Below are positions 10,678 to 29,700 of a stretch of 64,000 nt of DNA, piece by piece; the first letter of the stretch is position 1; each line of letters begins with the position of its first letter. Source of the DNA: Ramazzottius varieornatus (Eukaryota; Animalia; Tardigrada). The DNA lies in the NCBI GenBank assembly GCA_001949185.1, contig BDGG01000001.1, forward strand, positions 2,993,324 to 3,057,323. Reading direction: 5' to 3'. The notes beneath the pieces are model-generated. The model was not told where the DNA came from, ran no database searches, and saw nothing but the letters and a program-made list of their open reading frames with translations. Position numbers and translations under genes: made by a program.

Positions 10678-12690
10678 TGAGATGCAAGTAACAGAAATGT
10701 ACCGAAGATATTTAGTATGGCGTCTCTATTACATGCGCCCGAAACCTGGGAAATCTGGACGTACCTGCTTTCTATCAGCCCTATCCGGGTGCTTGCAGTC
10801 CGCGATGGAATCGCTTCAGCTGCAACGTAATGAGGCACAGCGAAGCAAAGACGACAGGCGCATGTAGAACGGAAGTTCACCGGATACTTCAAGGCTCCTT
10901 ATCCCCGTGCCCTTCCGCGTCTTCTCAGGTTCTTCAGTCATGGTCATATAGATCATCAAGTTCAACACCACTGCCTACGTCATTGCGGAAAAGTCGCTCG
11001 TCGTGGGTCGTCTAGGACGTACGTGCCTCCCTTCTTCGGGCGTAGGTACATTGAGAAGATGCAAGGACATGCTGCGTTTATGGTACGTCACATACCAACC
11101 GGAATGATCCTCAAGACGGTGGATATCAATTGATACAACGCCACGTTGTGGATAGGATTTCCATTTGCTTTCTTCACCGCGTCTTTCGGCTTCCGGGTCG
11201 ACAGAATGATGTTAATGAACAATATGACACAGAAAATGCGTGGTAATTTTGGCTACGTTTGCGGAAGTTCGTCGGTTCATCTCAAATTCACTTTGCTCTA
11301 ATTCAAAACCAAAGTAACTGCAGTCGAAGTCTTCTGTATGATTAGTCACAGAGTGTCACACAGTTCATTCGTTGTTAATAGAAACGAAGGACTTCGGCTT
11401 TTTGCGCCAAGAAGAAGCGGATGTGAACATGAGTTGGGTAAACACAATTATCGGACAAACAATAAGAATATGAAAAACGACAAGTCATTAAGGCTATGAA
11501 TTATACAAAGTTCGTTAACAAATTCCGGTTTCCGAGAACGAAGATTTGTGCCATCGCACGTTTTCAGCGATAACGAAAACCGTATCCGTATCATAACTAT
11601 ACCAATGGATATATCAGAATAACCTTCGAAGAACCGGTCCTTCTCGCATGCTGTGGAGACCTTCTGTTCTTCAGAAAACTACTTAAGCCGAGAATTGCTC
11701 ATCTGAACTACTATGAATATTTGCTGATCAACTTACCAACTTTGTTTGAATCTGCTTTCGATTTTTGACGGCTCACCGAAAACGAACTGGCTTTCTCCTT
11801 CTTTCCTTATCGTCCTGGTTCTCAGCTTAGTGGCGGTGCTCGGTAAGCGGTTTATGAAAACCTTTTTAGTATGCTAGATATTGTTCTGCGGAATGGTCGG
11901 TTGACGTTTGTCTTTTTTAGGGTCCGTGGGCGCTTACAGACCTCCAGAACAGACTATTATTATAAGAACTATCCCGTAGTATATGGCGGATACAGAGGAT
12001 ACTTCTGAAAACATCGCTGATTCGACATGAGCCTGTCCAGATTTTAACTTACCTATTTTTGGGAATATACTGTAGATTTTCTAGATATAGAGCGCCAATT
12101 GATCATACAGGTCGTTTTAGACCTAATAAGAACTCGCTTCACAGATGTACCTCTACAGAGCTTGCTACCTGTACATTATGTCTGCATTTCTGTTTGCGTT
12201 ATTCCATTAGAATCTGGGTAATACTTATCCTGCATTCGCGATGCCAAAGTTTGGCAATGCCTTTACGAATTTCTAAAGAATTTATCCCGCTGCTGTGCAC
12301 TGCGGTTGGTCTAGCCTCCCACCGGAAGTTGCGCCACCTGTAGGGAATCTTCGAGTTTGACATGTCGTAGTGACCAATGTCATGTAATGTGACTGGCATT
12401 GTAAGATGGTGATGTCATAGGTTCGTAAGGGCTCATCCTGTCAGATTTCTCATTTCAGTCTATCTGCTGTCTGCATAGCTTCTCCCTGTTTGTCTATCCC
12501 TTTCCCGTTTTTCATTCACCACTAGAAAGAAGATGGCAGAATACGAGGATCATCAGATCTACTCATAAGCTTATTGTTTCATTATCTTACTTATTCGTCG
12601 CGATCATGCAGTGGGCCCGGAAGATATTCTGTAATATTTACCAATGTTCATCTTGAAAGTTCTGAAGGCAGCAACAACCCACAGTCCGCC

Positions 12691-15600
12691 ATGGCTGTCG
12701 GGAGGGGCAGTCGTGGAAGTCGGGGATCACCAGTAGAAGGCCAGAAGAGTTTGCTCAAAGGAGACAACGGAGCCACCGACGATGAGAACGACGAAGCTTG
12801 GTGAGTTGTTTACCTTGGTTGTGAATGCTAATTACCGATTGCTCTTACTTCCGTTCGTCTTTAGGACTGTCTCCTACAACAAAGGCAATGAGAATGGAGT
12901 TGACAGGAAGCGTCAAATCACGAATGGTGCTTCTTCTCGATCCATTCAGGATAAAATCGAGGATCTGGAGGTGGACGATCATGGTTTCGGTAAGACTTGA
13001 ACGGGGTTGAATGACTGAGTCGGCCACCGTTGCAGTCGTGGGGTGTGCGATGGCGTCATACAGTAAATCTGTAGGGTGGCCGACTTGCCTGGTGGTGTTC
13101 GACTTGCTGCATAGTGGCTGATTGGCCCCTTTGCACCTCGTGAAATCCTCGGTACCTCATTAGGTTTGATGAGCGTTCCTTGTTTTCCGGGGTAACGGAG
13201 TGCATCATGTTTTCATTTTTCTGAGTAATGAAAAGGAAAGAGTAGTCAGCAGGGCGAGTCTGTTCCTTATCAGCAATCAATTTGATGACTTATCCACATT
13301 TTTTTCCCTCCTTCCTTCGGTCTCTTGGGGTTGTGTTGAGGAACGACATGAATTTGCTGTCTCTTTGTAGTCGATCAGACTCCCGTGGTGAAGCCCAACC
13401 GGAAGTTGTTCATACTGATCGTTGTTGGAGTAGCGCTTGGCGTCGGCGCCATCGTTTCTGTCGTCGTCTTTTACTTCCGTTCCAGCTACGTACCCAATAA
13501 TGTACGTATTACGCCTCACAAAGAACGAAAATCGGTTTACCGTACAACAGCCAAGAACTTTTTCTTTGCAGTACATTATCGTCGTGGATGCAGGATCGTC
13601 TCATACGAAACTAAATGGTAAAACGAGGAATCTGCTCAACAATTTTCCCACTATGTTTTTCTTTTCTACTGTCACCGGAACTGGAGTCGAAAGCTTGCGG
13701 TGAGTTTTGTGAAAGCTTTTTTATAGTAGTGTTTGCTTTGCAGTCTTTCATTACCGCGGGGATAAAGTTAACGGGACGGGGAAGATTGAGCAGTTGGACT
13801 TTATGGAATGCAATGGTAAGTTACGTGGGCGATGCTGCACCTTTCTGCCGAGCTTTCGGCGTCGTAGAACTCTGATTAACGGCTTGGATAGTCGGCTGTG
13901 AAGGGCTTAAAAGGGGGAGGCCTGCGGCTGTGTCAGATAATCAGTCTTTGCCTCTAGCTATATCGATTAAGTTTACTTCTATTGATCTGCCCTCTAGGTA
14001 CTGTCATGTCGTTCATGTACGATTACGAAAGGATGCGCACAAGTTGGACGCCTTGCTTTCAATTTGCCAAAGAGAAAGTGCCCGAGGACCGATGGGATAA
14101 AACAGAAGTTTATTTCGGTGCCACTGCCGAACTTCGACAATTCCAGTAAGTACCAAAGATAGGCTTCGTCCGGACTCAAAGTGATATGATTTTCCCTCCA
14201 CTTCAGGACAACTCAGCCCGAGAAAGCCGAGCGTCTGTTAAACGACGTGCGGACTTTCCTCAACGAAACCTACGATCTTTCCCCAGATCGCACTCATGTT
14301 CTGATACTCGATGGATCGGAAGAAGGTGCCTTGGCCTGGGCCACCGTCAACTTCATCACGAAAAGCCTTCTGCCCGACAACATCACATCCAGTTCGGATC
14401 GAGCCCCACAGACGTACGGGTCGATAGACCTGGGTGGCTCCTCGACTCAGATCGCTTTCACTACGCAAGACCCCGCCGAGGCCAACTTCCACCTGACTTT
14501 CTTCGGAGCACAATACCAGCTCTTCAGCAAGAGCTTCCGGTGCCGGGGAAAAGGTAAGCAGGGTACCTAGAAGTAGCCGTTTTCCTGTCAAGACAATCTG
14601 TTAAAGTCAGTAGACAGAATTCGGAATATCTCAACAGCCTGCATACCCTTATGTGACGGTAAACTAAAGCGGGTGGCAGATGTAGGTACTTGAAACGTGA
14701 TTACAAGTTCAGTATTGATCTTTCAGGTATATTTTGAAATTTGTTTTCGGTCATATCTCTTTTTTCTGTGGTATAGGTGAAGCACATCGATTACTGAAGG
14801 CTCAGCTTGTAACCCAAAGCAAAAACAGCCAGTTTGTGATCCATCCGTGTTATCCGCGTGGCCTGGTGACCAATGAATCGCATACGGATATCTTCTCCGC
14901 GCAATGTACAGGGTATCTAGACAAGGAGAAGTTTGTGCACAGGCCGCGATACCAGCTTCAAGGAACCGGTGACGTGGATCAATGTCGGGCACATGTACGG
15001 AAGATCTTCGCGGATCCGACCGGCAAATGTCCTTTCCAGGACGAAGACTGCTCGTTTAACAGCCAACTGAAACCTATGAACATCTCGGGACCTTTCATGG
15101 CACGTGTCTTTGGTTGTTTCTCTGTTCACCGATTTGTGGTTGAAGTATCCTTTTTAGGGTTTTGCCGGTCTGTACTTCGTCATGGACTTTTTCAACTTGT
15201 CTAACGGCGAGGACAGGATGACCAGCAACTTGACGAACTTCCGGGAAGTTTATCGACGACACTGCAATCAGCCCTGGTCCAATGTGAGTACCTTATCTTC
15301 GAGCACGCGATACGTAGGAGTCTTTAACTAATAGTCCGAAGAGCTAACCGATGCCCATCTACTTATCAGCTTTCCAGCAGTACCAACCGCTTCATGAAGG
15401 GTTATTGCTTTGACGGTAATTACATTGACGTTCTACTCACGGAGGTTTACGGGTTCAGTGACGAAGAGTTCGGGAAGATTGAATTCCGAAAATCCGTAAG
15501 TATGGAGTACTTTTGTTCTTAGGGCACTTGATTTCAAAGTGAAGCCTTTCGTAGGTGAATGGAGTGAGTACAGGATGGGCAGTCGGGTTAGCGCTAAACA

Positions 15601-16071: not shown

Positions 16072-16798
16072 CTAGACGAGGCAGTACAAGATCGAAACCA
16101 GAATAACGGAGAACAGGAAAAACGGAAGGCTTACTTGTGTGGTCAGAAAGCCACTACTAACAAAAAGTCCTGTTGGCGTGCTATCGGGGAAAATGGTTTC
16201 GGGAAGCTCTCTGGTTAACGATCCGGGAGCAGTACTAATGCTGGAGTCTTTGGCTGAGCTACGCAGTGTTGTGGAGGTATCCGGATTTGCTTCCGATTGG
16301 CGAGGAAACGGAAGATCCGGGGAACCAAAAAGGGCCGCGTGTGAGGTAGCATCACAGACATCGAAACAGAGGCATTTTTCCGGTTCGTCATTCACCGTAT
16401 AATTTTGAACACCGGCCACCTGGAGACTTGCGCCATTAATGAATAAACAAGGGTTGTATACAGCTTCGACGGGTTGGCAATTCCGGCGAAGGCTCACAAA
16501 ATCTACGGATAACCAGGAGATAAATTCATGACCATGTCTGGGATAGCACTAGTCCGCACAACACGAAAGGGCACTCCATGCTGCTATTCTGACCTGGAGT
16601 GAAGCGCGAGAGGTGATCGACGCAGCGATATTCCGGAAGAGAGCAGTTTACAGCCGCTGTTTTTCGGTCAGTCCAACAATCAACATGCTGGTTGAAAGAG
16701 TCAAGCCGTAAGCATGTGTAACAAAGAGGCTGCGCAGTGACAGCCGCAGTTAGGACTGCAGCAGTCAAAAGAATGGGACAAGAGGTTTTCGAACCCAT
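16072..16798 (-). CDS. Cys-rich cell-surface protein (signal peptide, Ly6/quiver-like Cys pattern, S/T linker, C-terminal hydrophobic TM/GPI signal), 2 exons
   Basis: MGSKTSCPILLTAAVLTAAVTA-QPLCYTC...; a probable ~57-nt intron joins the two ORFs; ends in LPFFLFSVILVSILYCLV; TATA-like tatata at ~16837. Confidence 0.65.
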
Positions 16799-17296
16799 CT
16801 TTGGGTATCATTATTAAGCTAGACGGGCTTTCCGTACTATATACCGATAAGGGTCTAACTCCAGAATTATTAGTAGAGGCGAGGGCAATTAATCAGCACG
16901 GAAGTCAGATATTACGGCGGGAAATATGAGCCGGATGCTCACTGTATGTCTCAAGACTACAGACGTGACAATTTTGATTTCACAACCAGTAACACACGTG
17001 GTCAGACCCGGAAGTACAGACGCGAAGACTGGGCGTTACCGTCAGGACTTAATGCAGTGGGTGCTGCCTCGTGAGCATTTGCCTGCGGAGGTCAGCTAAA
17101 AGAATGATCTGGATTGTATGTCGTAAGTTTTTGCGGGAATCGGCACCATCGAGGACGAGTATCGTTTTTATATCAAGCAGGAATATATTCGGAAAGCCAG
17201 CCACGAGTTTTTTACTAGTGAAGTCGAGAGGTTCGTTCAAACAGCCCGATCTAGATGAATCGCTTCCAAGCTACAGTATTCAGTCTTTTCAGCCCA

Positions 17297-20200
17297 TTAA
17301 GGAGGTGGCGGAGGAGGTGGAGTCTCCGTGGTGCTACGTCGTGTGGTCGTACGCGGCGTGGTGGTACGTTTCTTCGCGTCCTCTTCCAGTTTCTTGATCA
17401 TCTCATCCAACGAAGCTTGCATGCTCAGATACGCCGCACTGTGAGTGGGCTTGGAACCTGGCTGCAGCGTTGCTCCCACTGGACGTTTGGTACGGCTGGT
17501 CATGGCACCAAGTTGCACTATCATGTTATGTAAAGCAGCCTGTAGCTGCTGAAAGGACTTGGTCGTGGCGGTACCACTCGACGAAGTACCGTTCGCTGAG
17601 GTACCATTTCCTCCTGCCCCTGGTAACTGAATACCCGACAGAATTTCATGTAGGTTAGACTCTATTTGCTGAAGACTTAGCTTGGTCGTGCTGAGGAAGG
17701 CAGGTCGGTGACTGGTGGTACGGCCAAACGTCGACCCGTAGCGCGTTGTTGACCTCGGATGCCAAGAAGTGGACGGCTGGAGTCTCGTTGTAGAATGCAG
17801 CGTTGAAACCAAAGAGGTATTACTGCTTGTCAAAAAGTGCGGGGTCGTGGATTCTTCCGTCGAACCGGAAGTAGGTGGACTTGCTGTCTCTATGGTGGTT
17901 CCACTTGTTGACGAAGGAATCAAAGTGGAAGTCATTGCGGGCGTAGTGCTTGTGGTAGATGTGGTCGGAGGCAAAGACGATGGTGCGCTGCTGATGGTAG
18001 CCTGCGAGGTAACTGGAGTGGCAGCCATGGTGGACGTTGGGTCTGTAGCGGATGTTGAGCTAGTCGACATCGTTGGCGAGGAAGTTGGGGACGCACTAGT
18101 TGTACTCGATTCAGCGGTTGATGGGAGAATCGTGGTGAGTACTGTGGTTAGGGTTCGTGGGGTAATGGTTGTCGTGCTGGTGGAAGTGACGACCGTACTT
18201 GGTGGTAAGGTGGTACTCACGCTGACTGGCAATGGAGCCCTTGTCTCGGTGGTTTGTTCAATGGTGGTGGACGTGGTGGCGGGTGTGGTGGTCGTCGGCA
18301 GAGTTGACGGTAAAGTGGTACTGGCCGTTGTCGGCAGTGCTGTGGATGTGGCTTCGGTTGACGGCGTGACGGTGGAAGAGCTAGCAGTACTGACGACCGG
18401 AGATGTTTGTTGCGTCGTAGCGCTCGTGCTGGGAGAAGTGCTGGTGAAGCTTGGGGAAGTGGATGTTGACTGGGTCGTCATCGTCGTCGTTGGCGGCAGA
18501 GTAGTGGCGGCTTCTGATGGGGGTGTATCTAGGGTTGAAGATTCGGTGACCACAGCTTCTGTTGTAAGCGATGTAGACAAACTTCCGTAACTACTCAGTG
18601 CGTCAGGTGCGCTGGGAGTAACTGTAGATGTATCCGCGAAAGCAGAAGTTGAGGGCGGAGATGAGGCTGCAGGAGTCTCGGAGGTAGCCAGCGAGCTGGA
18701 AAATGGAGTCTGCGTTGTGGGGATCTCACTGTTAACGCTCGAATCACTCATCGACCCGACAGTCGGCGGTAAGGAGGTCGTTGAGGGGATCAACAAAGAG
18801 GTCCCGGAAGTGGCGGGCGGCGCGTCCGTTGGTGACGCCGTCAAAGGAACGGAAGACTGTGGCATCGAGGTGATGTCAGTCATGAGGGTCGATGTAGGCG
18901 GAGAATCACCCGGAAGGTCACTTGTAAAAGGTGCTTCGGTGAAGTCATCAAACAGGATGGCGGGCGGTGGAGAACCGGGTGCTGTTTGTCCCGAGTTAGG
19001 TGGAAGAGAAGCTTCTGGTTGATTCGTTGTGGGTACCGGTAGAGCAGTTGGCCCATCGTTAGGGTTAAGATCATCATAATCGTCAGCCGGAACTGTCGTT
19101 TCGAATGCGACAGTAACACTTCCATCATGTCTACCGGCCTGTTCTGGAGGGGGTGGAATTATTGTGGACTCGGTTGACTGTTCCTCTGGGAAAGGATCCA
19201 GCACACCCCCCTTGCTGCAGTTTGCGTTAGCTGGGCACGGTGTCGTTGAAGAGGAACCGCTTTGTGACGAAATTGCCGCTGAGGCTGTGGTGCTCACGGC
19301 GCTGGTAGAGCTCGAGTCTGTCGAACCTGGTACAGTGGCGCCACTCGGCGAACCACCTGTGCTGCCTATAAGACAGGCAACAGGCACTTACAATCACAGC
19401 CGCAGAAATCCCAGCAGAGTTCTTTATGGAAAAAAGCGATTATGTTGGCAAATAAAGGGTCAATTCCCAGTAATATTAGCGGCAGTTTATTGCAATACAA
19501 GTGGCAAAAATCAACAGTACAATATACGTTATGTACCAGTAGTGCTCGCAGTACTTCCGCCAGTTGGAGTGGAGTCAGTGGAGGACGGCGTGCTCCCCCT
19601 CGAAGACGAAGTGTTTGCTCCATCGTTTACCTTAGCTTGCAAAATATTGATGAGGTTTTGAACCTGCTGGGTCAGCAAAGCATAGTTTGGTTTGTCCGGT
19701 GAGCCACTAGACGGTTTGCCGCTCGACGTGGAACCGCTTCCCGTGGCTCCACTTGCCGGAGAAACCGTAGAGCCTGTAGGCGCGATGGTAGAGTCACCCT
19801 TGTTCAATTGTGCTTCCATCTGCTTGATCAGGGCTTGCAGGGTCTGGAAGACCTCGGTTTTGTTTGGTGGCTGATGGTTGTTCGTCTGGTTCAGACTACT
19901 CGCAAGGATGCTCTGTGTGGTGGAGGAGCCGCCGTCTGTGGTACACGTGACCGATGCCGTGCCCGTCAAAGATTCAGATTTCGAGCCTGTATCATTAGCA
20001 CCAGGGGGCACTTCTTGACGAAACTCCATGTCGAGGATCGTGAAGACTGTCGTCGAAGCTCCGATGGCTTCGTTGGGCAACTTCAGGCAGACATTCGCTC
20101 CACCGTCGGGAGTCGGGCTGACCGTAACTGGGATCATACCCGAGTCTCCTGATGTCAGCTGTGGGGGAAACTGCACGGGAGGTTTATTCAGTGCCGCTGC

Positions 20201-23023
20201 CTGCGGACAATCGACTGAAACGGAAATAACTCAGTAAATCGATCAGAAAATTTTCTTATGCAAATGCGATGTGGGAAGAACGAGAAGCTTACGCGGTGCG
20301 CACGTGCTGGCATCGCATTCATACGTGTTACAGATTTCCTTGCAGTCGTATTCACTTAGCCTGTCCAGTTTTGGAATCGAGGTGACAGCCGAGTTCTTTA
20401 TGACGAAAGCTGGACTCCCGGAAGTGGAGAAGTCGTTCAGGTCATTGTGTGTGATACTGCAGTAGTCGTAAGGGTACGTCGGCATGCTGACGTTATTGAC
20501 AGTGTACTTTTCGTACGCCACTTCCATTCCTGAAAAGATGAATACTCTGAAGCAGAATTCTGTCCTTACTCTCAGTGATGATGCGATCAGGATGGTACCT
20601 GGTAAGATATTCTCGTGAAGGACTTCGATGTAGTTGTCTCGATCGGGTCTCTGGTGCTCGTTGCGTCGACCAAGGACCAGAACAAAGTACTTCATGATGG
20701 TGCCGATATTGCCGTCGAAGCATCCTCCGGGACCGCTGGTCAAAATCAGCTTCTGCTCGGTGCTTCCGGTCGAGACCAGGTGTCTCGAAACACCGGGCAG
20801 CGAATGACAGCCACGTTTAGCATTTCTGTACAAAAAACGGTGCAGCGTTTATCGCACAAGCCATTGCCTGATTTTCTACCCTGATGCCATATTGGACTTA
20901 CGGACTGTCATCAACAGGAGCGATATGTATTTTATACGTCGGCACAGAGGGCGACACTTCCACGAACTGGACGCACCCGTTTAGATCAGCCGACACTTTC
21001 CTCACGGCTTGCTGAATCATGGCTTTCTGGCTGGCGGCTAGGAGAGAAAGAGCCTCACTGTAAAATGCAAGAACCAAGAAAGAAATTATCACTTACTGTA
21101 GCTCGGGTCAATAAAATACGGAACCGTATTTTGCGACCACTTCAGATAGTTCTGGTCACTGTTGATCACTCTTAAAGCTTTGCCGCGACCTTCTCGTTTC
21201 CGCCTTCTAACCGGAGGGGCTTTGGTGGTTGGAGAAGAACCTGAAGAGACCCCCCGCGGATTTTATTTCAGTAAGCGATTTATCGTCACGAAGCACGAGA
21301 GCATCTTACTCTGTGATTCGGGAAGTGGAGCCGCCGGAACAATGTTCGTCACAACAGTACATGTCGTAGTTTGCGATGACTGGGTCGTCATAGGCGAAGT
21401 CGCCCCCGGTCCTAACGTGGTCAGCGAACCAGGACTAGACCCGTTCATCGTTGCAGGAGGAACCGAGTAGCATAAAGTGGTCGCCATTGCCTCGTCGTCG
21501 CGGCCTGACGGTCCTTTGGTCGTCGATGTTGGTGGCACGGTGGACGGCTTTTTCACTTGGCTAGCGCAGTCCACTGTATTCACTCAGTACAGTATATTAA
21601 TCGAATGACATGACTTTTATTAGGGAGTCTTCTTACGGATTTCGCAGGTAGCTGGGTCGCATCCATACAGAGCTTTGAGCTGCTGACAGTCGCAGGTACT
21701 CAGTTGGTCCAACTTCGGGATAAAATAAGGTGCTTCCTTGACAGTGAAGACCTCTGTGCCGTTGACTGCCGCAAAGTCGGTGGGTTGGTTGTGGGTGATG
21801 CTGCAGTAGTCGTATGGACAAGTGATGTGGACCTCGGCTGCCGGGTAGGTCTGGTAGGCGACTTGAAGTTCTGCAACCAAACAAAAAGAAGTCGGTAAGT
21901 TTCAGAATTTAAACTTTGGTTGAGATGATGATCATTAATATGGGAAGGAAGAAGGATCGTGTTCATGTTGACCACTGCATTGCCGCCGTTTTTCTACGTT
22001 ACGTTCGTGGTGTTCGTTCTACCACAATGAAGGAGGAACTCCAACGCCTTGAGGTGCTGGCCAAACCTAACTCAGTCCAGTATCATACTTACGCGGGTCG
22101 ATTTTGTCGTTGCTGATTTGTAGATACCCGTCACGGTCAGGTCGCTGATGCTCGTTCCGCAGTCCCATCGACACCGCAAAGTATCTGTAACCATTCAAGC
22201 TCCTTCACCCGCTTATTCTGAACCTCCAAAAACCATTCCCGATTCAACCAAAGACCCAAGGACTATGGGTACCTACTTCATCAGTGAATGCATGCTACCG
22301 TCGAAACACCCCTCTGTAACATCAAAAAGCAGTCGTTTCCAGTGTTCCGTGTGTAACGAGAAACGTACTTTACGTACGTGGTCCAGTTGTGAGGAGCAAT
22401 GATTGCTCGGTCTTCCCCTGCGCCATGTTAGCGAGATATGTCCCGGCAAATGTGTGACAAAGCTTGGAAAATGTTGCGCTAAAAGCAGACAGAGATTAAG
22501 GTTCTCGGCAAACTTGGAAGATGAAAGTTCTGCCGGTGTTGTACTTAAGTGTGCTGCTGGTGTCTGTGGGAGTGACTTTAAGTTTGTAGGCCGGAGACTC
22601 GGCAGCCACTTCCGTGAACCTGACACACATGTCCAGGTCCGACATGACTCTCAACATGGCCAGCCGAATTTGTCCTTCTTCCTCATCAGCTGAAAACACC
22701 AATACGGTGACTAATTAGTTAAGTCAGACCAGCATCAAATATTTTATTGCTATTCGCGGGATCTTACGCACTGTACGCGGGGTCGATGTAGTACGGTATT
22801 TCCTTTCCCGGCCATTTTCCAAGTTTTGGATTCAGGTTGATGGCTCGGTTGTGCTTTGAAACAATGATGCTGGATCTTGCTGCAAAATAATATTCCGTTA
22901 AAGTAGTTACCTGCAATACAAGTGGTGACCTTTATCCATCAAGAGTAAAAATCTAGTACCAGTTTGAGCGATCATGAGTAGAAGGAAAGCGAACAGCAGA
23001 AGTCCATTTCTCCAATCGCCCAT
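17297..23023 (-). CDS. Secreted protein with two tandem inactive astacin (M12A)-like domains followed by a long S/T/P mucin region
   Basis: Signal peptide MGDWRNGLLLFAFLLLMIAQ. Domain 1: KWPGKEIPYYIDP...GLRNEHQRPDRD...PYDYCSITH. Domain 2: KWSQNTVPYFIDP...GRRNEHQRPDRD...PYDYCSITH. The terminal exon of ~690 aa is S/T/P rich. Confidence 0.85.
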
Positions 23024-23717
23024 TTTCCACAACGTTGGATCGATCCGTAAAAAATGCGAGGGACAAATCGGAAAGAATGATTCGGTTCTTCCTAACCTTG
23101 GGTATGCTCAGGAAACTGCAACTGTTTCACATGACGACTTGTACGGGAAATTGAGTTCAAGGCCCATCACACGTCAGCCAAACGTTTCCTTCGAAAGCCT
23201 GTTTGGCAAACTTCACGCTCTAATGGTCTCTGGAGAGCTGGAAACCGTGATCATCACAGTGTTTTTACGGCTGCTCGGCAGAAATTCCGCTCCTAACGTC
23301 ACGGTAGACTGGACCGGCGAGAGGCTACTAATATCACAAGAGCTGACATTACCGAAAACCAGAGGTCGCAGGAACCAAGTACGGATAATTCTCCGTACTT
23401 GGTTCTCCCACACTCCTAAATTTCCACAACAAAACAATGTCATGTAACTTTATGGACAAGAAATAAAACGACCAAGTCCAACTGGCCAACGGATGATATA
23501 GGCCGCTCAGGACATCAAAAAGGGGTCTTGAATGCGTACTTACCTTCAAATTTCAACAACATGCTGCTTCGTGAAACGAAAAAGTACGAGAATGAATAAA
23601 TAAAGGGAAAGATTAGAATGGACTATAGTGAGTATGTACTGCATTGAAAAGAAGAATTAACAACAACAACAAGAACAAGAAACCAGTGGTACTCGCTGAT
23701 AGTTCAAACCTGTGGAA

Positions 23718-26700
23718 CTATCCCAGCACAGGCAGATTATTCGATCCCCCGAGTTCCTCGATCAGCTTGTTCCACAGTTCACGCTTGCAGGACTTGTTCC
23801 TCTTGATATCGCCTAGCAGGCCTTGGAACTGGACAGGACCATTGGAGATGCATACCGACACCTGATGCGCCGCTTTCACCGTAGCGGCAAAATCGTCGTA
23901 TTCGACGGAGGAGATCTGGTGAATCTTTTGCTGCAAACACTGACGGAACCTGCAAACAAAAGACTATTTTGGAACGCAGACAAACAAAGTCGACAAGACC
24001 GCTTTTCGAGCGGCAAAGGATTTCAGCCCTAACACTGATGACGTGCACCACTGAGGAAAACAATCTTGTCGAGTTTGTTTGTCGAACCTCCTTTCATCAT
24101 TTTGGATTTATATTTCAGTTCTGCTCGTGGACTTACATGAGTAAACTTTTCTGCAAGAGCTGGATGACATGGTTAGATTGCCGGTCGCCCGGTAGAAAGT
24201 GCGCCACATCAGATGCCAGTTCGTACAGGACATAAGGACTGGCCACTGCGTTATGCGCCACTGTGCAGAATGTCTCGATGTAGTAGTAGTTTGAATTCGA
24301 GCCAGGTTGCAGCCTTTCCAGCTTCTTCGAGACTCCCAACAGCCACTTGACAAAGTCCCCATAGGGTGGCGACTTGTCGTACTTGATCCTCCACGGAGCG
24401 TCATTTACTCTTCGGCACAGCGTGTCCATGGCCAGGATGCCCACTCTGAAGGCGGCCACCATGTACGGGTTAGGAAGAACAGGAACAGGCGCTGGCTGGT
24501 TGTGTCGGAGGTGCATCAGAGCTCCTGGATGGACCATGCCGGAAGCTGGACCCATCAGACCGTTGTGCTGTCCGTAATGGTATGGATGAGCGAAGGGGTG
24601 AAAAGGTAGATTGACGTTGCGCATCTGGTTGAAGAGGTAGGGATGATGATGAGGGTGGGGAAGGTAGGGTTGAGGCAAAAGAGGCAGGCCATACGGCGGA
24701 AGTGGCAAAAGTGGAACTGAAATCCCAATACACCGAACGAATTTTCTTACTTAATTACTCGGAAAGAGATGGAAGCTCGGTGAACAAAGCTCCGCAAGAG
24801 TGTTTTCCCAAGTGGCGCACGTTTCAATGTTACTAGTTGAAAAAGAGCGTTACTTTAAAAACAACCTTGTCGTGTTTGTTCGCCGAGCCTTCAAATATTG
24901 TGGTTCTGACTCATTTTTAGATCAGATAATTATATCATTGTTCTTAACCAAGATTTTTGGTACGAGATATCCTTATTGTTCTGTTTGTATTACGAGTACC
25001 CTTACAGATCAATTTACAGTTTCGCTATCTGTGCTGCATCTTATTCTGACGACAGCTTCAGTTCTTACCGGGTTGATTGTTGTTGGGCCATACGCCGATC
25101 TCAAACTGCTCAGGCATGGGTTCGCCGACGGTCTCACTGTACAGTTCGTACCACTTTCGGGACACGTCAAACAGTGCTTCTGGGTAGACACCTCCGCTCT
25201 TCGCGCAAGTCTCGACGGCAGTCAGAGCTTGTTCCAGCATGGCATAGCTCTGTTCCTTACATTGAACAAGTGCTCGCTGGATCTCGAGAGGGTTCAAAGC
25301 GTGGGAGTGTGGAAGAATGGATAGGGCTAACTGGGCGGCGGCAGAGACCATATTAGAGTCGGCACATCGAGAGGCTTTGTCTGCTAGGACCGCGACTTCC
25401 GGTGGCGTCAGGTGGCCCTCCCAGTTGTCAACTAGGAAGTTCACCGCGCTGACACCGATGTCCATAGCTTGGGAAGTTATCCACGAAACATAGGATGAGT
25501 ACGTTCGCGACTGCCAGTTTGGACTGACGCAGTTATGGATACCTGAAACAGAACAATACAGTGCAATAATAATGAACCCAACACGGCCTTGACAGCCTGT
25601 GAACAAGGCCGTGCCGCTGATATTACTATTCTAGAAGAAGTACGACGCGGATAGCCGAAAGCAAATACCGAGAAAGCAACTCCACTGGGAGTGCCCAGTG
25701 GAAAAGCTGGATTAACTCAAACGAATTTAGATGTGATAATAAGAACGAAGATTTACCCAGGGCGGATATGCCAATCTGGAAAGCACACATGTGGAGTGCC
25801 CGATGAGGACCAGCTTGCTGGTGTCCCCACGCCGGTTGGAAAAGGATGCTATGATTCACATTGCCACCCGCCTTGGCCAACACAGTCTTAGCTAACTCAA
25901 ACAAGAAGTGTGAGATCGCTTCGCTAGGTTGGTTAGGTTCAGAAGGACACTTCCTTTTGTTGCCTTTACCAGCCTTCGAACTGCTAGGAGCTGACTCGAG
26001 AAACACAGGAACGGCACGCGGTGTAGCCATGCTGGGTACAATGGCTTCGTCTTCTGGCTTCAGTGAAGAGCCACGCGAATCCGTACTGGAGGACTCCCCA
26101 CTGGATGTAGCGCTATCGGGGTCCTTCGGATGCTTCCCTCGAGGAAAACGACGGATCATGGTGGGACTGTTGTCACTGCTGGTAGTCTCCGGTGCGGAAC
26201 TGTCAATACCACCCGGGAGTCCATCACCGTGCTTCTTTCTAGGCTTGAAAACCGTACACCTAAATACAGTATCTTTCAGAAGATGTTCATAAAGTTTTGC
26301 TTGCATATTGTTTCCCTAAATTATTTTTTCTATTTCTTTCTTAAACATATTTGTTTTTATTTTTAGTTTTTGGCGAATAGTTTTACCGTAATTTATTTTC
26401 CCACAGCTTGTCGTCTTCGACTGTGGATGAGTCTTCCGAGTTGTTATCTGCGGTCAGTTTCATCCCCGAGAATTTGGATTGGCATTGCTCAGCTTGGTGA
26501 TCGAAACTGAATGGCTTAGCTGTTGAGTGGTACGGGTGGACTTCCTGGTTCGAATTCTGTGGGTTCTGGTCCACCATGTTCTTGATCTGGGCAAACGATA
26601 TAGGATAGTCTTTCGCTGTTTCGAACGATGCCCGACGGTATTGGTGGACGTTCTTGTCCAGTAAGTGGTCCATAACGCGATCCAACTTAGCTTGATCGTC

Positions 26701-29700
26701 TTTGAAGGTTACCAGAAGGGCACAGGCCAGCTCGCCCCGTTGTCGTCGAGTACCTTCACAGACTAATGGATGGTCGGCTTCTGAGACATTGTTCTTCATA
26801 CCCAGAGCGGCAACCGCAGCTTCGAAACCCAGCTCAGCATCCAGATGTTCCTTTCTCTTGAAAGCCGACCGGAAGTTCTCTGCAAATGATGAGTATACTT
26901 ACACGGAACAATTAGAAAATCTGGCACGCCCCTGAGTGGCCTGCGAGTATCCAACAAGGCCGTGCCGCAAGCTCAGTTTCAGTTGTTTTGAATTCCCAAT
27001 CACCTTTTTCGTGGTCGAAGCCACAGAACACGCCAAAAATGTACGTAGCAAGGTTCAGCGGAAGTAATGCGTCGCCCCGTGACCGCAAAGCACCGTCTCT
27101 CAGCGCTCGTGCTTTCTGTCGAGCGACACTGAGTTCTTCCGGCCCAAGTGTCACTTTTTTCAGAAGGTTAACCAGCTCGATCTCCTGGTGGAACATCTTC
27201 ACTTCAACAGCTTTACTGATGGACGGCGGTCGAGCCATCTCAAGGCCGAACAAGCCAATGCGGAAAGCGAGGCTGCGAGTTTCGGCTTTGTCAGCCAGGA
27301 CGTTGGTCAAGAAGATCAGCTTGACCATGGTGGCTTCACACATGGCCGTGATCTTGTGAGCCACCCGTTTCTTGGTGGTGGAGGTGGACTGAAGAAGGCT
27401 GTGTTCTAGTTTGAGGAAGTCTGGCGGACTGCGAAGAAGCCCTTCGCCCAGCTGGATGGCCAGCTTGTGAGCAGCCTCGTTGTAGCCGTGCACCAGGAGC
27501 GCGTCGGCCCGCAAGTACAGCATCTCGAACTTGTCCACGTTGTCGACGGATGATGAAGCTTCGGAACTTCTGAGAGTGGATGGTTCAGCTTCAACGGAAT
27601 CGCTGTCTGAATCCGACTTCGGTCCTGCAAAACGGAACACTTTTCACTTGGCAGCTCGAAATCTACGTGAAATAATCGCAGGAAATTGTTGGTTCGCTTC
27701 TTCCCCGAAACGCACGGAAAATTTCATCTAAATAAATGAACACGGTTGATATTTATCGAACGATTAAATAGTGTTCGGTGCTTAAGCTAAGACCTTTTTG
27801 CTTTGGAATTTCGGTACGAGTGATATATTTTGTTGCGTGGAATATTTTCCCACCTTCATGGACGAAAGCCTCGTCCCGTGCTTCAACAGTATTGCTCTTG
27901 CGACTCTCGTTGAGCGAGATGCAATGCGTGCCTTGGATTTGCGGCGAAGAAGAAGCCTTAGCATCACTTCCTTCAGTGCCGAGTTTTCCTCGTGTCAATC
28001 TCAAATGGTGCATCGAGTTGCCACCTACAATCGTCACACCGTCTACTGGGTAGTTCTTCCAGTTCAACGTGCACATCTCCATGGCTGGTTTAAACCCCGC
28101 AAAGTGTGCTATGTCCGACGGTCGCAGCCCACCAGGGTTCCCAGCCACGTTCTGGCCATGCGCGTTCTGGTTCTTGGACTTTTTGACCTTCTCGATGACT
28201 TGGTTATGGTAGCTTTCGAACTGCTGACGTAGCGTACTACGGTCTTCATCCGAGTTCGCAGGGTTCAGCGCGGCCAGTTTCCAGAAGGTGACGATCTCGT
28301 CCATTAAACTTGCGCTAGCGTGCTGTGGCGTCGCGTTGGAGATGCCAGTACCCACACGACCTAGTGAAGGACTTGCTACGTTGGAAGACCCGTGAGAGAC
28401 CTTCGTGCTGTACCACCATACCACAATCTGCAAAGACAACCAACCTCGAAAATCGTTTATTTTTGTCCGTGTGGCAAGTATTACCTGTTCGCAAGCCAAG
28501 CATTCATTCGTGATGATTGTCAGCAAATCCACTGCGTTGTTGTCCGCCTTACGGAACATTTCTTTGATGATGGACAGAAGGTTCCACATGCCTTCTGGCT
28601 CCTTCCCGCGAAGAGGTCGCAGCAGGTTCGACCATTCGGCAGCGGCAGGTGGCGCTGTCGCCGACAGGTAATTTACGTCACTGGAAAAGATCGGTTCATG
28701 CTTTTTGAAATTAGCCAACGCGACAGGGAAGGGTACTCGTACCTGCAGACCGTGGGGGACGGGATGCAAAACTTGACTAGCAAGTTTCGAATGTTTTCCC
28801 GCAGCAAAGTTTCGTTCAAGCACCACGAGCTCATTTCATGCAGCGTGCATTCAGCTGTGGGGTCAGGAGCACCGTCAGTTGTGTTCATTACGGACATGGG
28901 CTGAAGGAGCTCGTCCAGCAGTTTCTGAGCGGTGGGAAGAGCTTGCCGTGGTAGCTCGTGGAGGAAGTACTGAGCAAATTTCCATAATTGATTCTTGTCC
29001 AAACGGGACAGGGACTCCGAGAGCGGAGCTCGAAGCGTACTGGACTGAGCCTACCAGAACAAAGTGTGTCGCGGTTGTTTTCCCTCACAATAAGTATCGG
29101 CGTCTTGATTTGATGTACTACCTGATGGAGTCTCTGGAGACAAACAGCCACAATGTGACTGCACCATGTTGCCACATCTGCTTTGTCGCAAGTACAACTA
29201 CAGGAGGTGATTCGATTGCGATCGAATGTGATTGCCACATTGAAAGCAGCGGCGCCAGCGCCGCCGACAGCCGGAGGAACTACGGATGCGTTTAGATGCA
29301 ACCCTGTAAGCAAACACTGTTGAACTACAGAGGATGTATTTTCGTTCTTCTCACTTGACGTCCTCCCATCAACGAACTCAAGGACATACCGATTTGCAGC
29401 AAATTTTTCACGAGCTTTTGCCGGTAGAGCGTCTCCCCTTTCAAGAATTCTTCGGCATTCCCAGTCGACAAACAGCAATACAAGCTAAAATGAAGATGCT
29501 TTTGTAACTAACAACTTATGACTGCCGCAGATACTGGCGAATATTTTCTGTTCTGTAAATGTACCGTATATCTTCCTCGTTGTCGGGAAAGCTCCAAAAC
29601 GCTATCCTCTTTTGCAGCTGCTCGGGAACAGGAGGATTATGTCGATCGACCAGCTCAAAGGGAACGCGTCGTGCGACTTGTCGAGCTGCTAATTCCACCA

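What the first reader, a model, noticed from the sequence alone, without database searches (positions are those of the whole stretch)
20215..22850. Tandem dead astacins: two protease-fold domains that lost all zinc ligands in the same way
Seen: the astacin signature HExxHxxGxxHExxRxDRD reads KYFAVSMGLRNEHQRPDRD in domain 1 (~22130-22285, split by an intron) and KYFVLVLGRRNEHQRPDRD in domain 2 (~20639-20698). All three Zn-binding His and the catalytic Glu are replaced. The Met-turn SxMHY becomes SITHN in both (YDYCSITHN). The structural G, E..R.DRD, W...PY.ID and Cys are retained. Established: these residues are essential for metzincin catalysis. Inference: a fold-retaining pseudoprotease acting as a binder, decoy or scaffold, possibly a lineage-specific family.
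Basis: partly seen in the sequence, partly recalled or inferred. Interest (0 to 1): 0.8.

Follow-up and report, generated by a model that had tools for sequence, protein, structure and literature searches.

The report
Tardigrade mucin with two dead astacins
This is an intact tardigrade gene for a secreted mucin-like protein with two astacin protease-fold domains that lack every zinc-binding and catalytic residue; it belongs to a large, apparently undescribed, so far tardigrade-only family of such dead proteases that descends from one ancient loss and is still under strong selection.

Summary
On the minus strand, a hand-built 14-exon GT-AG model (23023 to 17297, 1511 codons in frame) encodes a signal peptide, astacin domain 1, an S/T/P linker, astacin domain 2 and a mucin-like tail of about 915 residues. 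Both domains match Pfam Astacin. Both read K-Y-F..L/M..G..N-E-H-Q-R-P-D-R-D where astacins have HExxHxxGxxHE, and SITHN where astacins have SxMHY.

The two domains did not lose the site independently. A search of 1.84 billion proteins found at least 57 full dead domains in clusters at 50% identity. They form one supported clade (SH-aLRT 98). All 25 members I looked up come from Ramazzottius, Hypsibius or Paramacrobiotus. The Met-turn Met is Thr in 57 of 57.

- The same tandem gene occurs in Paramacrobiotus ("mucin-2-like") and in three unlabelled contigs.
- A Hypsibius family member folds as astacin (pLDDT 88; TM about 0.8 to astacin, BMP1 and HCE-1).
- Against a relative 97% identical in DNA, dN/dS is 0.06.

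So this is a functional pseudoprotease. A binding or scaffold role is inferred, not shown. I found no literature on the family. The joined spliced protein was never searched or folded.

The parts
17297..23023 (-). Whole gene model: 14 exons, 4533 coding nt = 1511 codons plus stop. Order: signal peptide, dead astacin D1, linker, dead astacin D2, mucin-like tail.
   Evidence: All junctions are GT-AG and in consistent phase, and the total length is divisible by 3. The model was built by hand. No RNA evidence was available.
22960..23023 (-). Exon 1: start codon and signal peptide MGDWRNGLLLFAFLLLMIAQT. No astacin-type propeptide follows. About 20 residues lie before the domain's Trp, and there is no FxGD aspartate switch.
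   Evidence: The signal peptide was judged by eye (charged n-region plus hydrophobic core), not by a predictor.
21637..22879 (-). Dead astacin domain 1 (exons 2-7: 22879-22772, 22689-22545, 22478-22378, 22313-22277, 22184-22093, 21870-21637).
   Evidence: Pfam Astacin hits on exons 6 and 7. Exon-wise tblastn to P0003 and to P0006 domain 1. It groups with domain 1 of the Paramacrobiotus two-domain genes.
22130..22278 (-). Domain 1 zinc-motif position: K|YFAVSMGLRNEHQRPDRD, interrupted by the intron 22276-22185. His92 is Lys, Glu93 is Tyr, His96 is Ser, His102 is Asn. Glu103 and R.DRD are kept.
   Evidence: Alignment logic as.
21788..21802 (-). Domain 1 Met-turn position: SITHN (Met is Thr, zinc-ligand Tyr is Asn).
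21310..21573 (-). Exon 8: S/T/P-rich linker between the domains. It begins (L)DCASQ, parallel to (L)DCPQA after domain 2.
   Evidence: It is the fastest-evolving part (pN 0.42 against L003).
20293..21240 (-). Dead astacin domain 2 (exons 9-12: 21240-21097, 21037-20902, 20825-20599, 20529-20293). A basic stretch RRRKRE lies at its N-terminal side (about 21208-21191).
   Evidence: Pfam Astacin E=2e-14. It is sister to domain 2 of Paramacrobiotus P0006 (SH-aLRT 91). dN/dS is 0.06 against L005. The exon 9/10 acceptor at 21037 was chosen over an alternative at 21056 because it gives the spacing seen in relatives.
20636..20692 (-). Domain 2 zinc-motif position: KYFVLVLGRRNEHQRPDRD.
   Evidence: Aligned to HELGHVIGFWHEHTRPDRD of tolloid-like 1 (3edi).
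20444..20458 (-). Domain 2 Met-turn position: SITHN.
17297..20214 (-). Exons 13 (20214-19537) and 14 (19365-17297, including the stop): a mucin-like tail of about 915 residues. S+T+P is 37% and 54%. It has no DNA tandem repeats, several short amphipathic (F/Y)xxLQxxLxxMIxxL-type segments, and ends in PPPPPPP.
   Evidence: No credible Pfam domain. The same layout occurs in Paramacrobiotus P0006, where AlphaFold2 gives disorder plus five short helices.

Best explanation
The locus is an intact, selected tardigrade gene for a secreted protein of about 1511 residues. Its N-terminal half is two astacin-fold (M12A) domains. Neither can bind the catalytic zinc or activate water. All five zinc ligands and the general-base Glu are replaced, the Met-turn Met is Thr, and there is no latency propeptide. 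The C-terminal half is a disordered, probably O-glycosylated, mucin-like tail.

The dead state is inherited. One ancestral astacin lost its site early in tardigrade evolution. That gene radiated into dozens of paralogues. In one of them the already dead domain, with its exon block, was duplicated in tandem before this species and Paramacrobiotus separated.

Inferred mechanism: the domains keep the rigid astacin scaffold and serve as non-catalytic protein-binding heads. The scaffold features kept are the disulfide cysteines, Glu103, the R-x-DRD helix cap, and the W..IPY..D N-terminal strand. The heads would dock the mucin tail onto extracellular partners, most plausibly cuticle, egg-envelope or other apical-matrix proteins of the kind active astacins cleave. 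This would parallel the zinc-less ADAM domains that act as adhesion or scaffold modules.

Shown here: homology, loss of every catalytic residue, the fold (for relatives), single origin, purifying selection, and the conserved architecture.
Inferred: secretion, glycosylation, binding function, and the identity of the partners.
For: Homology and dead site:
- Pfam Astacin matches single exons. It matches both domains of the orthologue P0006, with a full-length match (profile positions 1-189) for domain 2 (protein-level E=8.9e-33).
- Alignments to solved astacins place K, Y, L and N under H, E, H and H, and SITHN under SIMHY.

Fold:
- AlphaFold2 on the Hypsibius member P0003 gives pLDDT 87.8 and pTM 0.82.
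- Foldseek top hits are HCE-1, BMP1, astacin, meprin and TLL1, with E down to 4e-14 and target TM-scores of 0.77-0.81.
- Domain 1 of the orthologue P0006 has pLDDT above 90.

Gene integrity:
- 14 exons, all GT-AG, 1511 codons in frame.

Selection:
- Against L005 there are 23 synonymous and 5 non-synonymous differences. pS is 0.127, pN is 0.009, and omega is 0.06 (Fisher p=4e-11). Intron divergence is 0.111.
- Against more distant orthologues, pN is 0.2-0.3 while pS is saturated at about 0.8.

Family:
- 556 hits at E<=1e-3. The top ~80 or so nearly all carry K/R-x-x-x-x-x-L-G-x-R-N-E.
- All dead tardigrade domains form one clade (SH-aLRT 98) with two subclades (99 and 95).
- Met147 is Thr in 57 of 57, and His92 is Lys or Arg in 51 of 57.
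- All 25 clade members looked up are Ramazzottius, Hypsibius or Paramacrobiotus.

Orthology and age of the tandem:
- The same architecture occurs in Paramacrobiotus XP_055338950.1 and in contigs L001 and L003.
- Microsynteny holds with ZSWIM8 (window and L003) and with GDA1_CD39 (window and Paramacrobiotus).
- D1 pairs with D1 and D2 with D2 across species.
- A tree holding all D1 and D2 domains of the two-domain genes as one clade is not rejected (p-AU 0.70).

Fusion pattern:
- NCBI's automatic names for two clade members in Paramacrobiotus are mucin-like: P0006 'mucin-2-like' (the orthologue) and P0126 'mucin-5AC-like'.
Against: - There is no transcript, proteomic or localisation evidence. 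The splice model is mine.
- The window's own domains were not folded, because the joined model was deliberately not built.
- Domain 2 of the orthologue did not fold in the 1167-residue run. The cause was technical: a shallow alignment for that domain.
- The closest relative, L005, carries three single-base gaps inside exons. They could be assembly errors or real frameshifts in that strain.
- No binding partner is known, and nothing here shows that the cleft is the functional surface.
- In clade A, Lys92, Asn102, Thr147, His148 and Asn149 are conserved. That would also fit a new small-molecule or catalytic site rather than simple binding.
Confidence: 0.8

Rival explanations
1. Regulator or decoy. 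The dead domains compete with active astacins for substrates, shielding cleavage sites. Alternatively they soak up endogenous astacin inhibitors, tuning extracellular proteolysis rather than building matrix.
For: The substrate-cleft scaffold and the S1'-side YDY motif are retained. Pseudopeptidases that regulate active cousins are a known theme (PMC11266112).
Against: None of the five active hits I traced came from a tardigrade: two were an annelid and a coral, and the other three did not come from the three tardigrade assemblies. So I found no active tardigrade astacin to regulate. This is a small sample and does not show absence. A mucin tail of about 915 residues, and dozens of paralogues with varied tails, fit structural roles better than stoichiometric regulation.
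Confidence: 0.12
2. Neofunctionalised enzyme or ligand-binding site. The conserved replacement set (Lys92, Asn102, Thr147, His148, Asn149, with Glu103 kept) forms a new metal-independent catalytic or small-ligand or glycan site in the old cleft.
For: In subclade A the replacements are themselves conserved: K in 25 of 30, N in 25 of 30, T in 30 of 30, H in 30 of 30, N in 24 of 30. That is more than simple loss of constraint predicts.
Against: Subclade B varies freely at the same positions: His96 is N, H or S; Tyr149 is P, I or L; His148 is M, I or L. So no common new site exists across the family. The conserved residues may simply fill and stabilise the empty zinc pocket. No chemistry was tested.
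Confidence: 0.06
3. Decaying pseudogene or annotation mirage. Two degraded protease relics that happen to keep open frames.
For: Catalytic residues are all gone. The close relative L005 shows three 1-bp gaps in exons. No RNA evidence.
Against: - The 1511-codon frame is intact across 14 canonical introns.
- Omega is 0.06 while intron divergence is about equal to pS.
- Orthologues with the same architecture occur in at least four other sources, and there are dozens of intact paralogues.
- Structural residues and cysteines are conserved.
Confidence: 0.02
4. Parallel loss. The two domains, and other family members, lost the zinc site independently and converged on the same residues.
For: Sporadic, differently substituted dead astacins do exist elsewhere. 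Examples are the nematode Cylicocyclus P0113 and the Hypsibius P0137 triple domain, both outside the clade.
Against: All K/R..N, S-I-T-x-x domains form one clade (SH-aLRT 98). Thr147 is shared by 57 of 57. D1 and D2 share three intron positions with each other and with the single-domain Hypsibius gene.
Confidence: 0.02

Closest known systems
Astacin family metallopeptidases (MEROPS M12A, Pfam PF01400): crayfish astacin, BMP1/tolloid, meprins, fish hatching enzymes HCE/LCE, nematode NAS proteins
   Same: Sequence family and predicted fold. The N-terminal W..IPY..D strand. The Cys42, Cys64, Cys84 and Cys198-equivalent cysteines. Gly99, Glu103 and the R-x-DRD segment. The YDY-x-S motif before the Met-turn. 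Secreted, multi-domain, extracellular.
   Different: No HExxHxxGxxH, no general-base Glu, Met-turn Met replaced by Thr, fifth ligand Tyr replaced by Asn, no propeptide or aspartate switch. Extra family-specific cysteines (YDYC, DC). Fused to mucin-like tails rather than CUB, EGF, MAM or ShK modules.
Zinc-less ADAM pseudoproteases (M12B: ADAM2, 7, 11, 18, 22, 23, 29, 32; C. elegans UNC-71)
   Same: Metzincin catalytic domains that lost zinc ligands and/or the general base and are kept as extracellular protein-interaction or scaffold modules (review PMC11266112). This is the best functional analogy.
   Different: A different subfamily (adamalysin, not astacin). ADAM pseudoproteases typically keep the Met-turn Met, are type I membrane proteins with disintegrin domains, and keep a prodomain. 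Here the Met-turn is also altered, and the protein is soluble and mucin-like. That review lists no astacin pseudoenzyme.
Paramacrobiotus metropolitanus XP_055338950.1, 'mucin-2-like' (P0006, 1167 aa)
   Same: Orthologue. Signal peptide, dead D1, S/T/P linker, dead D2, mucin tail with five short helices and a Pro-rich end. GDA1_CD39 lies downstream on the opposite strand.
   Different: Only about 47-54% identical in the domains. Its D1 has further degraded the R-P-DRD cap (NEHQGKLRD). It has no RRRKR stretch before D2 and a different upstream neighbour. It carries an automatic name only and is not recognised as a pseudoprotease.
Hypsibius exemplaris BV898_03756 and Ramazzottius varieornatus RvY_15516 (P0003, P0009; about 275 aa, UniRef name 'Metalloendopeptidase')
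   Same: Same dead motifs (KYFT[VI]ILGKINEHQR[PS]DRD, CPYDYCSITHNQ). Same three intron positions. Signal peptide, no propeptide.
   Different: Single domain, with only a short acidic tail and no mucin tail. Paralogues, not orthologues, of the window gene.

Membership tests
Astacin homologous family (Pfam PF01400 / MEROPS M12A, as a protein family) | Significant match to the Astacin profile | tested here: met
   Window exons: E=2e-14 (54.1 bits against a cut-off of 22.5) for 20246-20848, and 22.6 bits for the last exon of domain 1. In the orthologue P0006, both domains match and domain 2 covers profile positions 1-189 of 189 (protein-level E=8.9e-33).
Astacin homologous family (Pfam PF01400 / MEROPS M12A, as a protein family) | Astacin/metzincin three-dimensional fold | tested here: met
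   Met for relatives only. The P0003 model has pLDDT 87.8, and its Foldseek top hits are all astacins with target TM-scores of 0.77-0.81. Domain 1 of P0006 has pLDDT above 90. The window's own joined domains were not folded by rule. Domain 2 of P0006 was inconclusive.
Astacin homologous family (Pfam PF01400 / MEROPS M12A, as a protein family) | Conserved disulfide cysteines (Cys42-Cys198 and Cys64-Cys84 in crayfish numbering, from my own knowledge) | tested here: met
   Cysteines are present at GC.(R/Q)F, C(H)(T/S).(A/P)G, GCFDG and Y(G/E)C in both domains. They are nearly invariant across the family. In L003 domain 1 the first and last of these are lost together, as expected for a bonded pair.
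Active astacin metallopeptidase (functional membership) | Zinc-binding motif HExxHxxGxxHE with three His ligands and the general-base Glu | tested here: not met
   KYFAVSMGLRNE in domain 1 and KYFVLVLGRRNE in domain 2. The 23 active astacins in the same alignment are 23 of 23 H, E, H, H.
Active astacin metallopeptidase (functional membership) | Met-turn SxMHY with the Tyr zinc ligand (Tyr switch) | tested here: not met
   SITHN in both domains. Thr replaces Met in 57 of 57 clade members.
Active astacin metallopeptidase (functional membership) | N-terminal propeptide with aspartate switch that confers latency | tested here: not met
   Only about 20 residues (ARSSIIVSKHNRAINLNPKLGK) lie between the predicted signal peptide and the domain's Trp. 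There is no FxGD-like motif. The same holds in P0003. This was judged by reading the sequence, not with a profile.
Active astacin metallopeptidase (functional membership) | Zinc content and proteolytic activity | not testable with these tools
   Needs recombinant protein, metal analysis and protease assays.
Pseudoenzyme (pseudoprotease) | Homologous to an enzyme family, lacking residues essential for catalysis, yet maintained by selection | tested here: met
   Homology and loss as in the rows above. Omega is 0.06 against L005. Orthologues and paralogues are intact across at least three named genera.
Pseudoenzyme (pseudoprotease) | Expressed as a protein | not testable with these tools
   No RNA or proteome data were available. 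NCBI models of relatives exist, but their evidence is not visible here.
Mucin-like secreted glycoprotein | Long Ser/Thr/Pro-rich, low-complexity, disordered region behind a signal peptide | tested here: met
   Exon 14: 688 residues, S+T+P 54%. Exon 13: 225 residues, 37%. The orthologue's tail is predicted disordered.
Mucin-like secreted glycoprotein | Tandem-repeat (PTS repeat) organisation and dense O-glycosylation | tested here: not met
   Tandem Repeats Finder finds no repeats in 17000-23100. Glycosylation is not testable here. So this is 'mucin-like', not a canonical repeat mucin.

The most novel reading that the evidence does not exclude
Tardigrades have turned the astacin fold into a major zinc-free extracellular module family: dozens of paralogues per genome, often with mucin-like tails. 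The conserved Lys92/Asn102/Thr147/Asn149 pocket would be a new functional site, binding a glycan, a small ligand or a specific matrix protein. The family would build or protect the cuticle, egg envelope or body surface, possibly in connection with desiccation tolerance. Tardigrades may even have few or no active astacins left.
Probability: 0.15. Interest if true: 0.85.

Novelty: new variant of a known kind. Interest (0 to 1): 0.6.

Why it matters
Pseudoproteases are well known among ADAMs and carboxypeptidases. The astacin subfamily is treated as uniformly catalytic: a 2024 review of metallopeptidase pseudoenzymes lists none (PMC11266112).

Here a whole clade of zinc-less astacins is found that:
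- comprises at least 57 clusters at 50% identity,
- occurs in three named tardigrade genera plus several unlabelled sources,
- has a single origin, and
- is under strong purifying selection.

Databases label its members 'Metalloendopeptidase', 'low choriolytic enzyme-like', 'nas-15-like' or 'mucin-2-like'. So protease counts for tardigrade genomes are inflated, and a lineage-specific extracellular protein family has gone unnoticed.

The family offers a natural experiment on what a metzincin scaffold does without metal. It also gives concrete, testable candidates for tardigrade cuticle, egg or surface biology, including RNAi in Hypsibius exemplaris.

Tried and rejected
- Rfam scan of the window found nothing.
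- Tandem Repeats Finder on the gene found nothing. The tail is therefore not a repeat mucin.
- PDB sequence search with the last exon of domain 2 gave no hit. Sequence similarity there is too low, so the full-length relative P0003 was used instead.
- AlphaFold2 of the 1167-residue orthologue folded D1 well. D2 stayed at pLDDT about 30, because MAFFT stacked all single-domain relatives on D1. I treat this as technical, not as evidence against a fold in D2.
- dN/dS against L001, L003 and L004 was unusable as a ratio because synonymous sites are saturated. I used L005 instead.
- A furin-type cleavage between the domains (RRRKR before D2) was considered. It is not conserved: Paramacrobiotus has ARSRS, L003 has GRRKQE and L001 has GRGRAKR. 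I dropped it as a general mechanism.
- I tried to learn whether tardigrades keep active astacins. The best active hits traced were an annelid, a coral and non-tardigrade assemblies. This was inconclusive.
- The look-up of RvY_04335-2 (P0156) found no record.
- Literature searches found no paper on this family. They covered tardigrade plus astacin, M12A or metalloendopeptidase; astacin plus pseudoprotease; gene identifiers; and run accessions.
- The species of the window could not be named.
- Exons were used one at a time by reference.
Full report
WHAT IS THERE. The flagged interval lies in a eukaryotic, intron-containing gene on the minus strand. Six-frame reading and the raw sequence let me build a model by hand. 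It has fourteen exons. Every junction is GT-AG, every phase is consistent, and the total is 4533 coding nucleotides, which is exactly 1511 codons from the ATG at 23023 to the stop at 17297-17299.
- Exon 1 encodes a typical signal peptide (MGDWRNGLLLFAFLLLMIAQT).
- Exons 2-7 (22879-21637) encode astacin-like domain 1.
- Exon 8 is an S/T/P-rich linker.
- Exons 9-12 (21240-20293) encode astacin-like domain 2.
- Exons 13-14 (20214-17297) encode about 915 residues of mucin-like sequence. S+T+P is 37% and 54%. There are no DNA tandem repeats and no credible Pfam domain.

Exons were used singly by reference. Structure was predicted for natural database relatives instead.

CHECK OF THE OBSERVATION.
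- KYFVLVLGRRNEHQRPDRD lies at 20692-20636.
- K|YFAVSMGLRNEHQRPDRD lies at 22278-22130, split by the intron 22276-22185.
- SITHN lies at 21802-21788 and at 20458-20444.

Single exons hit Pfam Astacin (E=2e-14 for 20246-20848). HMMER alignment of the domain 2 exon with the solved tolloid-like 1 protease puts K-Y-F-V-L-V-L-G-R-R-N-E-H under H-E-L-G-H-V-I-G-F-W-H-E-H. A family member aligned to medaka HCE-1 puts SITHN under SIMHY. So three His ligands, the general-base Glu, the Met-turn Met and the Tyr ligand are all replaced. Gly99, Glu103, R-x-DRD, the W..IPY..D strand and the disulfide cysteines remain. There is also no propeptide or aspartate switch between the signal peptide and the domain.

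WHOSE GENE IS IT. The word search gave a 275-residue Hypsibius exemplaris protein (BV898_03756, P0003) with the same dead motifs. The window therefore comes from a tardigrade. I could not name the species. It is not one of the three annotated species: identity to their proteins is only 40-60%.

Because the claim of a lineage-specific family rests on absence elsewhere, I ran the exhaustive profile-free search of 1.84 billion representatives with P0003.
- It returned 556 hits at E<=1e-3 and 83 at E<=1e-10.
- A motif scan shows that the top ~80 or so hits almost all read K/R-x-x-x-x-x-L-G-x-R-N-E-[HY]-x-[RK]-x-[DN]-R-D.
- Canonical HExxH astacins appear only from about E=1e-18 downwards. Two of the best-scoring active hits are from an annelid and a coral.
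- All 25 dead-clade members I could look up are from Ramazzottius varieornatus, Hypsibius exemplaris or Paramacrobiotus metropolitanus.
- Their automatic names are 'Metalloendopeptidase', 'Peptidase M12A domain-containing', 'low choriolytic enzyme-like', 'nas-15-like', 'embryonic protein UVS.2-like', 'mucin-2-like' and 'mucin-5AC-like'. None flags inactivity.

ONE LOSS, THEN RADIATION. I built a maximum-likelihood tree of 86 full-length domains plus the two last-exon fragments of the window. It puts every tardigrade K/R..N domain in one clade (59 rows, SH-aLRT 98), apart from the active astacins and a few unrelated, differently substituted dead ones. The latter include a Cylicocyclus nematode protein and a three-domain Hypsibius protein.

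The clade splits into two subclades:
- Subclade A (32 rows, support 99; SITHN type) holds both window domains.
- Subclade B (27 rows, support 95) reads S-I-T-[MIL]-x.

Site counts:
- Met147 is Thr in 57 of 57.
- His92 is Lys or Arg in 51 of 57.
- In subclade A the replacements are themselves conserved: Lys92 in 25 of 30, Asn102 in 25 of 30, His148 in 30 of 30, Asn149 in 24 of 30.
- Subclade B varies at the same positions.

THE TANDEM. Window domain 2 is sister to domain 2 of Paramacrobiotus XP_055338950.1 (P0006; support 91). Window domain 1 groups with domain 1 of P0006 and of two further two-domain Paramacrobiotus paralogues (support 85). Exon-wise tblastn says the same: D1 to D1 is 54% and D2 to D2 is 47%, against 33-39% crosswise. 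An AU test does not reject a tree holding all these D1 and D2 domains together. That tree is in fact 12.9 log-likelihood units better than the quick free tree (p-AU 0.70).

D1, D2 and the single-domain Hypsibius gene share three intron positions: after ..Y(S/T), before the C.S..G segment, and before the ..AY..Y segment. D1 has two extra introns. After each domain the next exon begins with (L)DC. The simplest history is a genomic duplication of the exon block of an already dead domain, before this species and Paramacrobiotus diverged.

P0006 has the same layout down to the Pro-rich C-terminus. It also has a GDA1_CD39 gene downstream on the opposite strand, as in the window at 14.7 kb. The unlabelled contigs L003 (ENA) and L001 (Logan) carry the same D1-linker-D2 with the same motifs. 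L003 also has ZSWIM8 upstream, as in the window at 24.1-29.5 kb.

FOLD. AlphaFold2 on P0003 with a 55-row family alignment gave mean pLDDT 87.8 and pTM 0.82. Foldseek against the PDB returned only astacins at the top: HCE-1 (3vtg), BMP1, crayfish astacin, meprins, TLL1 and ZHE1. E-values go down to 4e-14 and target-normalised TM-scores are 0.77-0.81. MMPs come far behind.

In the 1167-residue orthologue, D1 is modelled at pLDDT above 90, and the tail is disordered with five short helices. D2 stayed unfolded because the alignment gave it almost no depth. Its full-length Pfam match argues that this is technical. A small independent hint for the fold comes from L003: its D1 has lost the Cys42 and Cys198 equivalents together.

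SELECTION. L005 (Logan run SRR28173874) is 97% identical to the window across 1.06 kb covering the linker and D2. In window-frame codons there are 23 synonymous and 5 non-synonymous differences. pS is 0.127, pN is 0.009, and omega is about 0.06 (Fisher p=4e-11). Introns differ at 0.111, close to pS. This is strong purifying selection on a domain without catalytic residues.

One caveat: L005 has three single-base gaps inside exons, as well as gaps in introns. I suspect assembly or read errors but cannot prove it.

More distant orthologues are saturated at synonymous sites. They still show pN of 0.2-0.3 in the domains against 0.42 in the linker.

HOW IT MOST LIKELY WORKS. Shown: an intact, constrained, signal-peptide-bearing gene whose two astacin-fold heads cannot coordinate zinc in the astacin manner, joined to a long disordered S/T/P tail.

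Inferred: the protein is secreted and O-glycosylated. The heads act as rigid non-catalytic binding modules that attach the mucin-like tail to extracellular partners. The most plausible partners are cuticle, egg-envelope or other apical-matrix proteins of the kinds astacins process in nematodes (moulting, collagen maturation) and fish (hatching). That link comes from general knowledge of the family, not from a test here.

The closest functional analogy is the zinc-less ADAM domains used as adhesion or scaffold modules (PMC11266112). The absence of a propeptide fits a protein that no longer needs latency.

Rivals:
- A decoy or regulator of active astacins. This is possible, but I could not show that tardigrades have active astacins.
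- A new ligand or catalytic site built from the conserved Lys/Asn/Thr/His/Asn set. Subclade A is suggestive, but subclade B argues against a family-wide site.
- A pseudogene. This is essentially excluded.
- Parallel loss. This is excluded by the tree.

COMPARISON AND NOVELTY. As a protein family, this is an astacin (M12A) homologue: the profile, fold and cysteine criteria are met. As a peptidase it fails every catalytic criterion tested. It should be filed as a non-peptidase homologue, that is, a pseudoprotease.

The kind is known (metzincin pseudoproteases). The variant is not. It is an astacin-derived, Met-turn-altered, propeptide-less clade, so far found only in tardigrades, highly expanded, and repeatedly joined to mucin-like tails. 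Full-text searches found nothing on it. They covered only open-access papers and bioRxiv. The proteins themselves are already in public databases under automatic names, so the sequences are not new. The recognition of the family is.

I rate it a new variant of a known kind, with interest 0.6. The evolutionary pattern is clear and somewhat surprising, and it has testable biology. There is no functional evidence yet.

Noticed in passing
window 24136-29478 (minus strand): The upstream neighbour on the same strand is a ZSWIM8 orthologue, with SWIM zinc finger, TPR_ZSWIM8 (E=1e-66) and ZSWIM4-8_C pieces. The same neighbour precedes the tandem dead-astacin gene in contig L003.
   Followed up: partly
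window 14734-15201 (plus strand): A GDA1/CD39 nucleoside phosphatase fragment lies downstream on the opposite strand. The same arrangement occurs in Paramacrobiotus (L006), which supports orthology of the locus.
   Followed up: partly
window about 21208-21191 (minus strand): A polybasic RRRKRE stretch lies just before domain 2 and looks like a furin-type site that could separate the two domains. It is not conserved in Paramacrobiotus, L003 or L001.
   Followed up: partly
window 17300-20212 (minus strand); P0006 residues 913-1126: The mucin-like tail contains several short amphipathic segments of the type (F/Y)xxLQxxLxxMIxxL. The Paramacrobiotus orthologue has five in the same order, and AlphaFold2 predicts them as isolated helices. 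They may be an oligomerisation or docking motif.
   Followed up: partly
L005:1-1063 against window 20430-21500: A contig from Logan run SRR28173874 is 97% identical to the window but has three single-base gaps inside coding exons. This is either assembly error or real frameshifts in that strain.
   Followed up: partly
L003:7614-7700 and 8588-8809: In domain 1 of this orthologue, the cysteines equivalent to astacin Cys42 and Cys198 are both replaced (DMSVRF, YGGDP). This is a paired loss, consistent with the two forming a disulfide.
   Followed up: no
P0137 (Hypsibius exemplaris OQV24185.1, 1244 aa), P0023 (625 aa) and P0113 (Cylicocyclus nassatus): Other dead astacins lie outside the main clade: a Hypsibius protein mis-named 'Kit' with three differently degenerate astacin domains, and a nematode one (VMLLH..G..G, SIMHN). 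Inside the clade, P0023 has a dead astacin domain followed by an Apyrase domain (PF06079, E=1e-94). That may be a true fusion or merged gene models.
   Followed up: no
window 16529-16807 (minus strand): An open stretch just downstream of the gene encodes a hydrophobic leader followed by a Cys-rich segment (CYTC...C...C..C). It has no Pfam match and may be a small secreted Cys-rich protein.
   Followed up: partly
L002 about 11031-11378 (Hypsibius exemplaris BV898_03756): The Hypsibius single-domain gene has an extra intron inside the PYDY|CSITHN motif. This intron is absent from both window domains.
   Followed up: no
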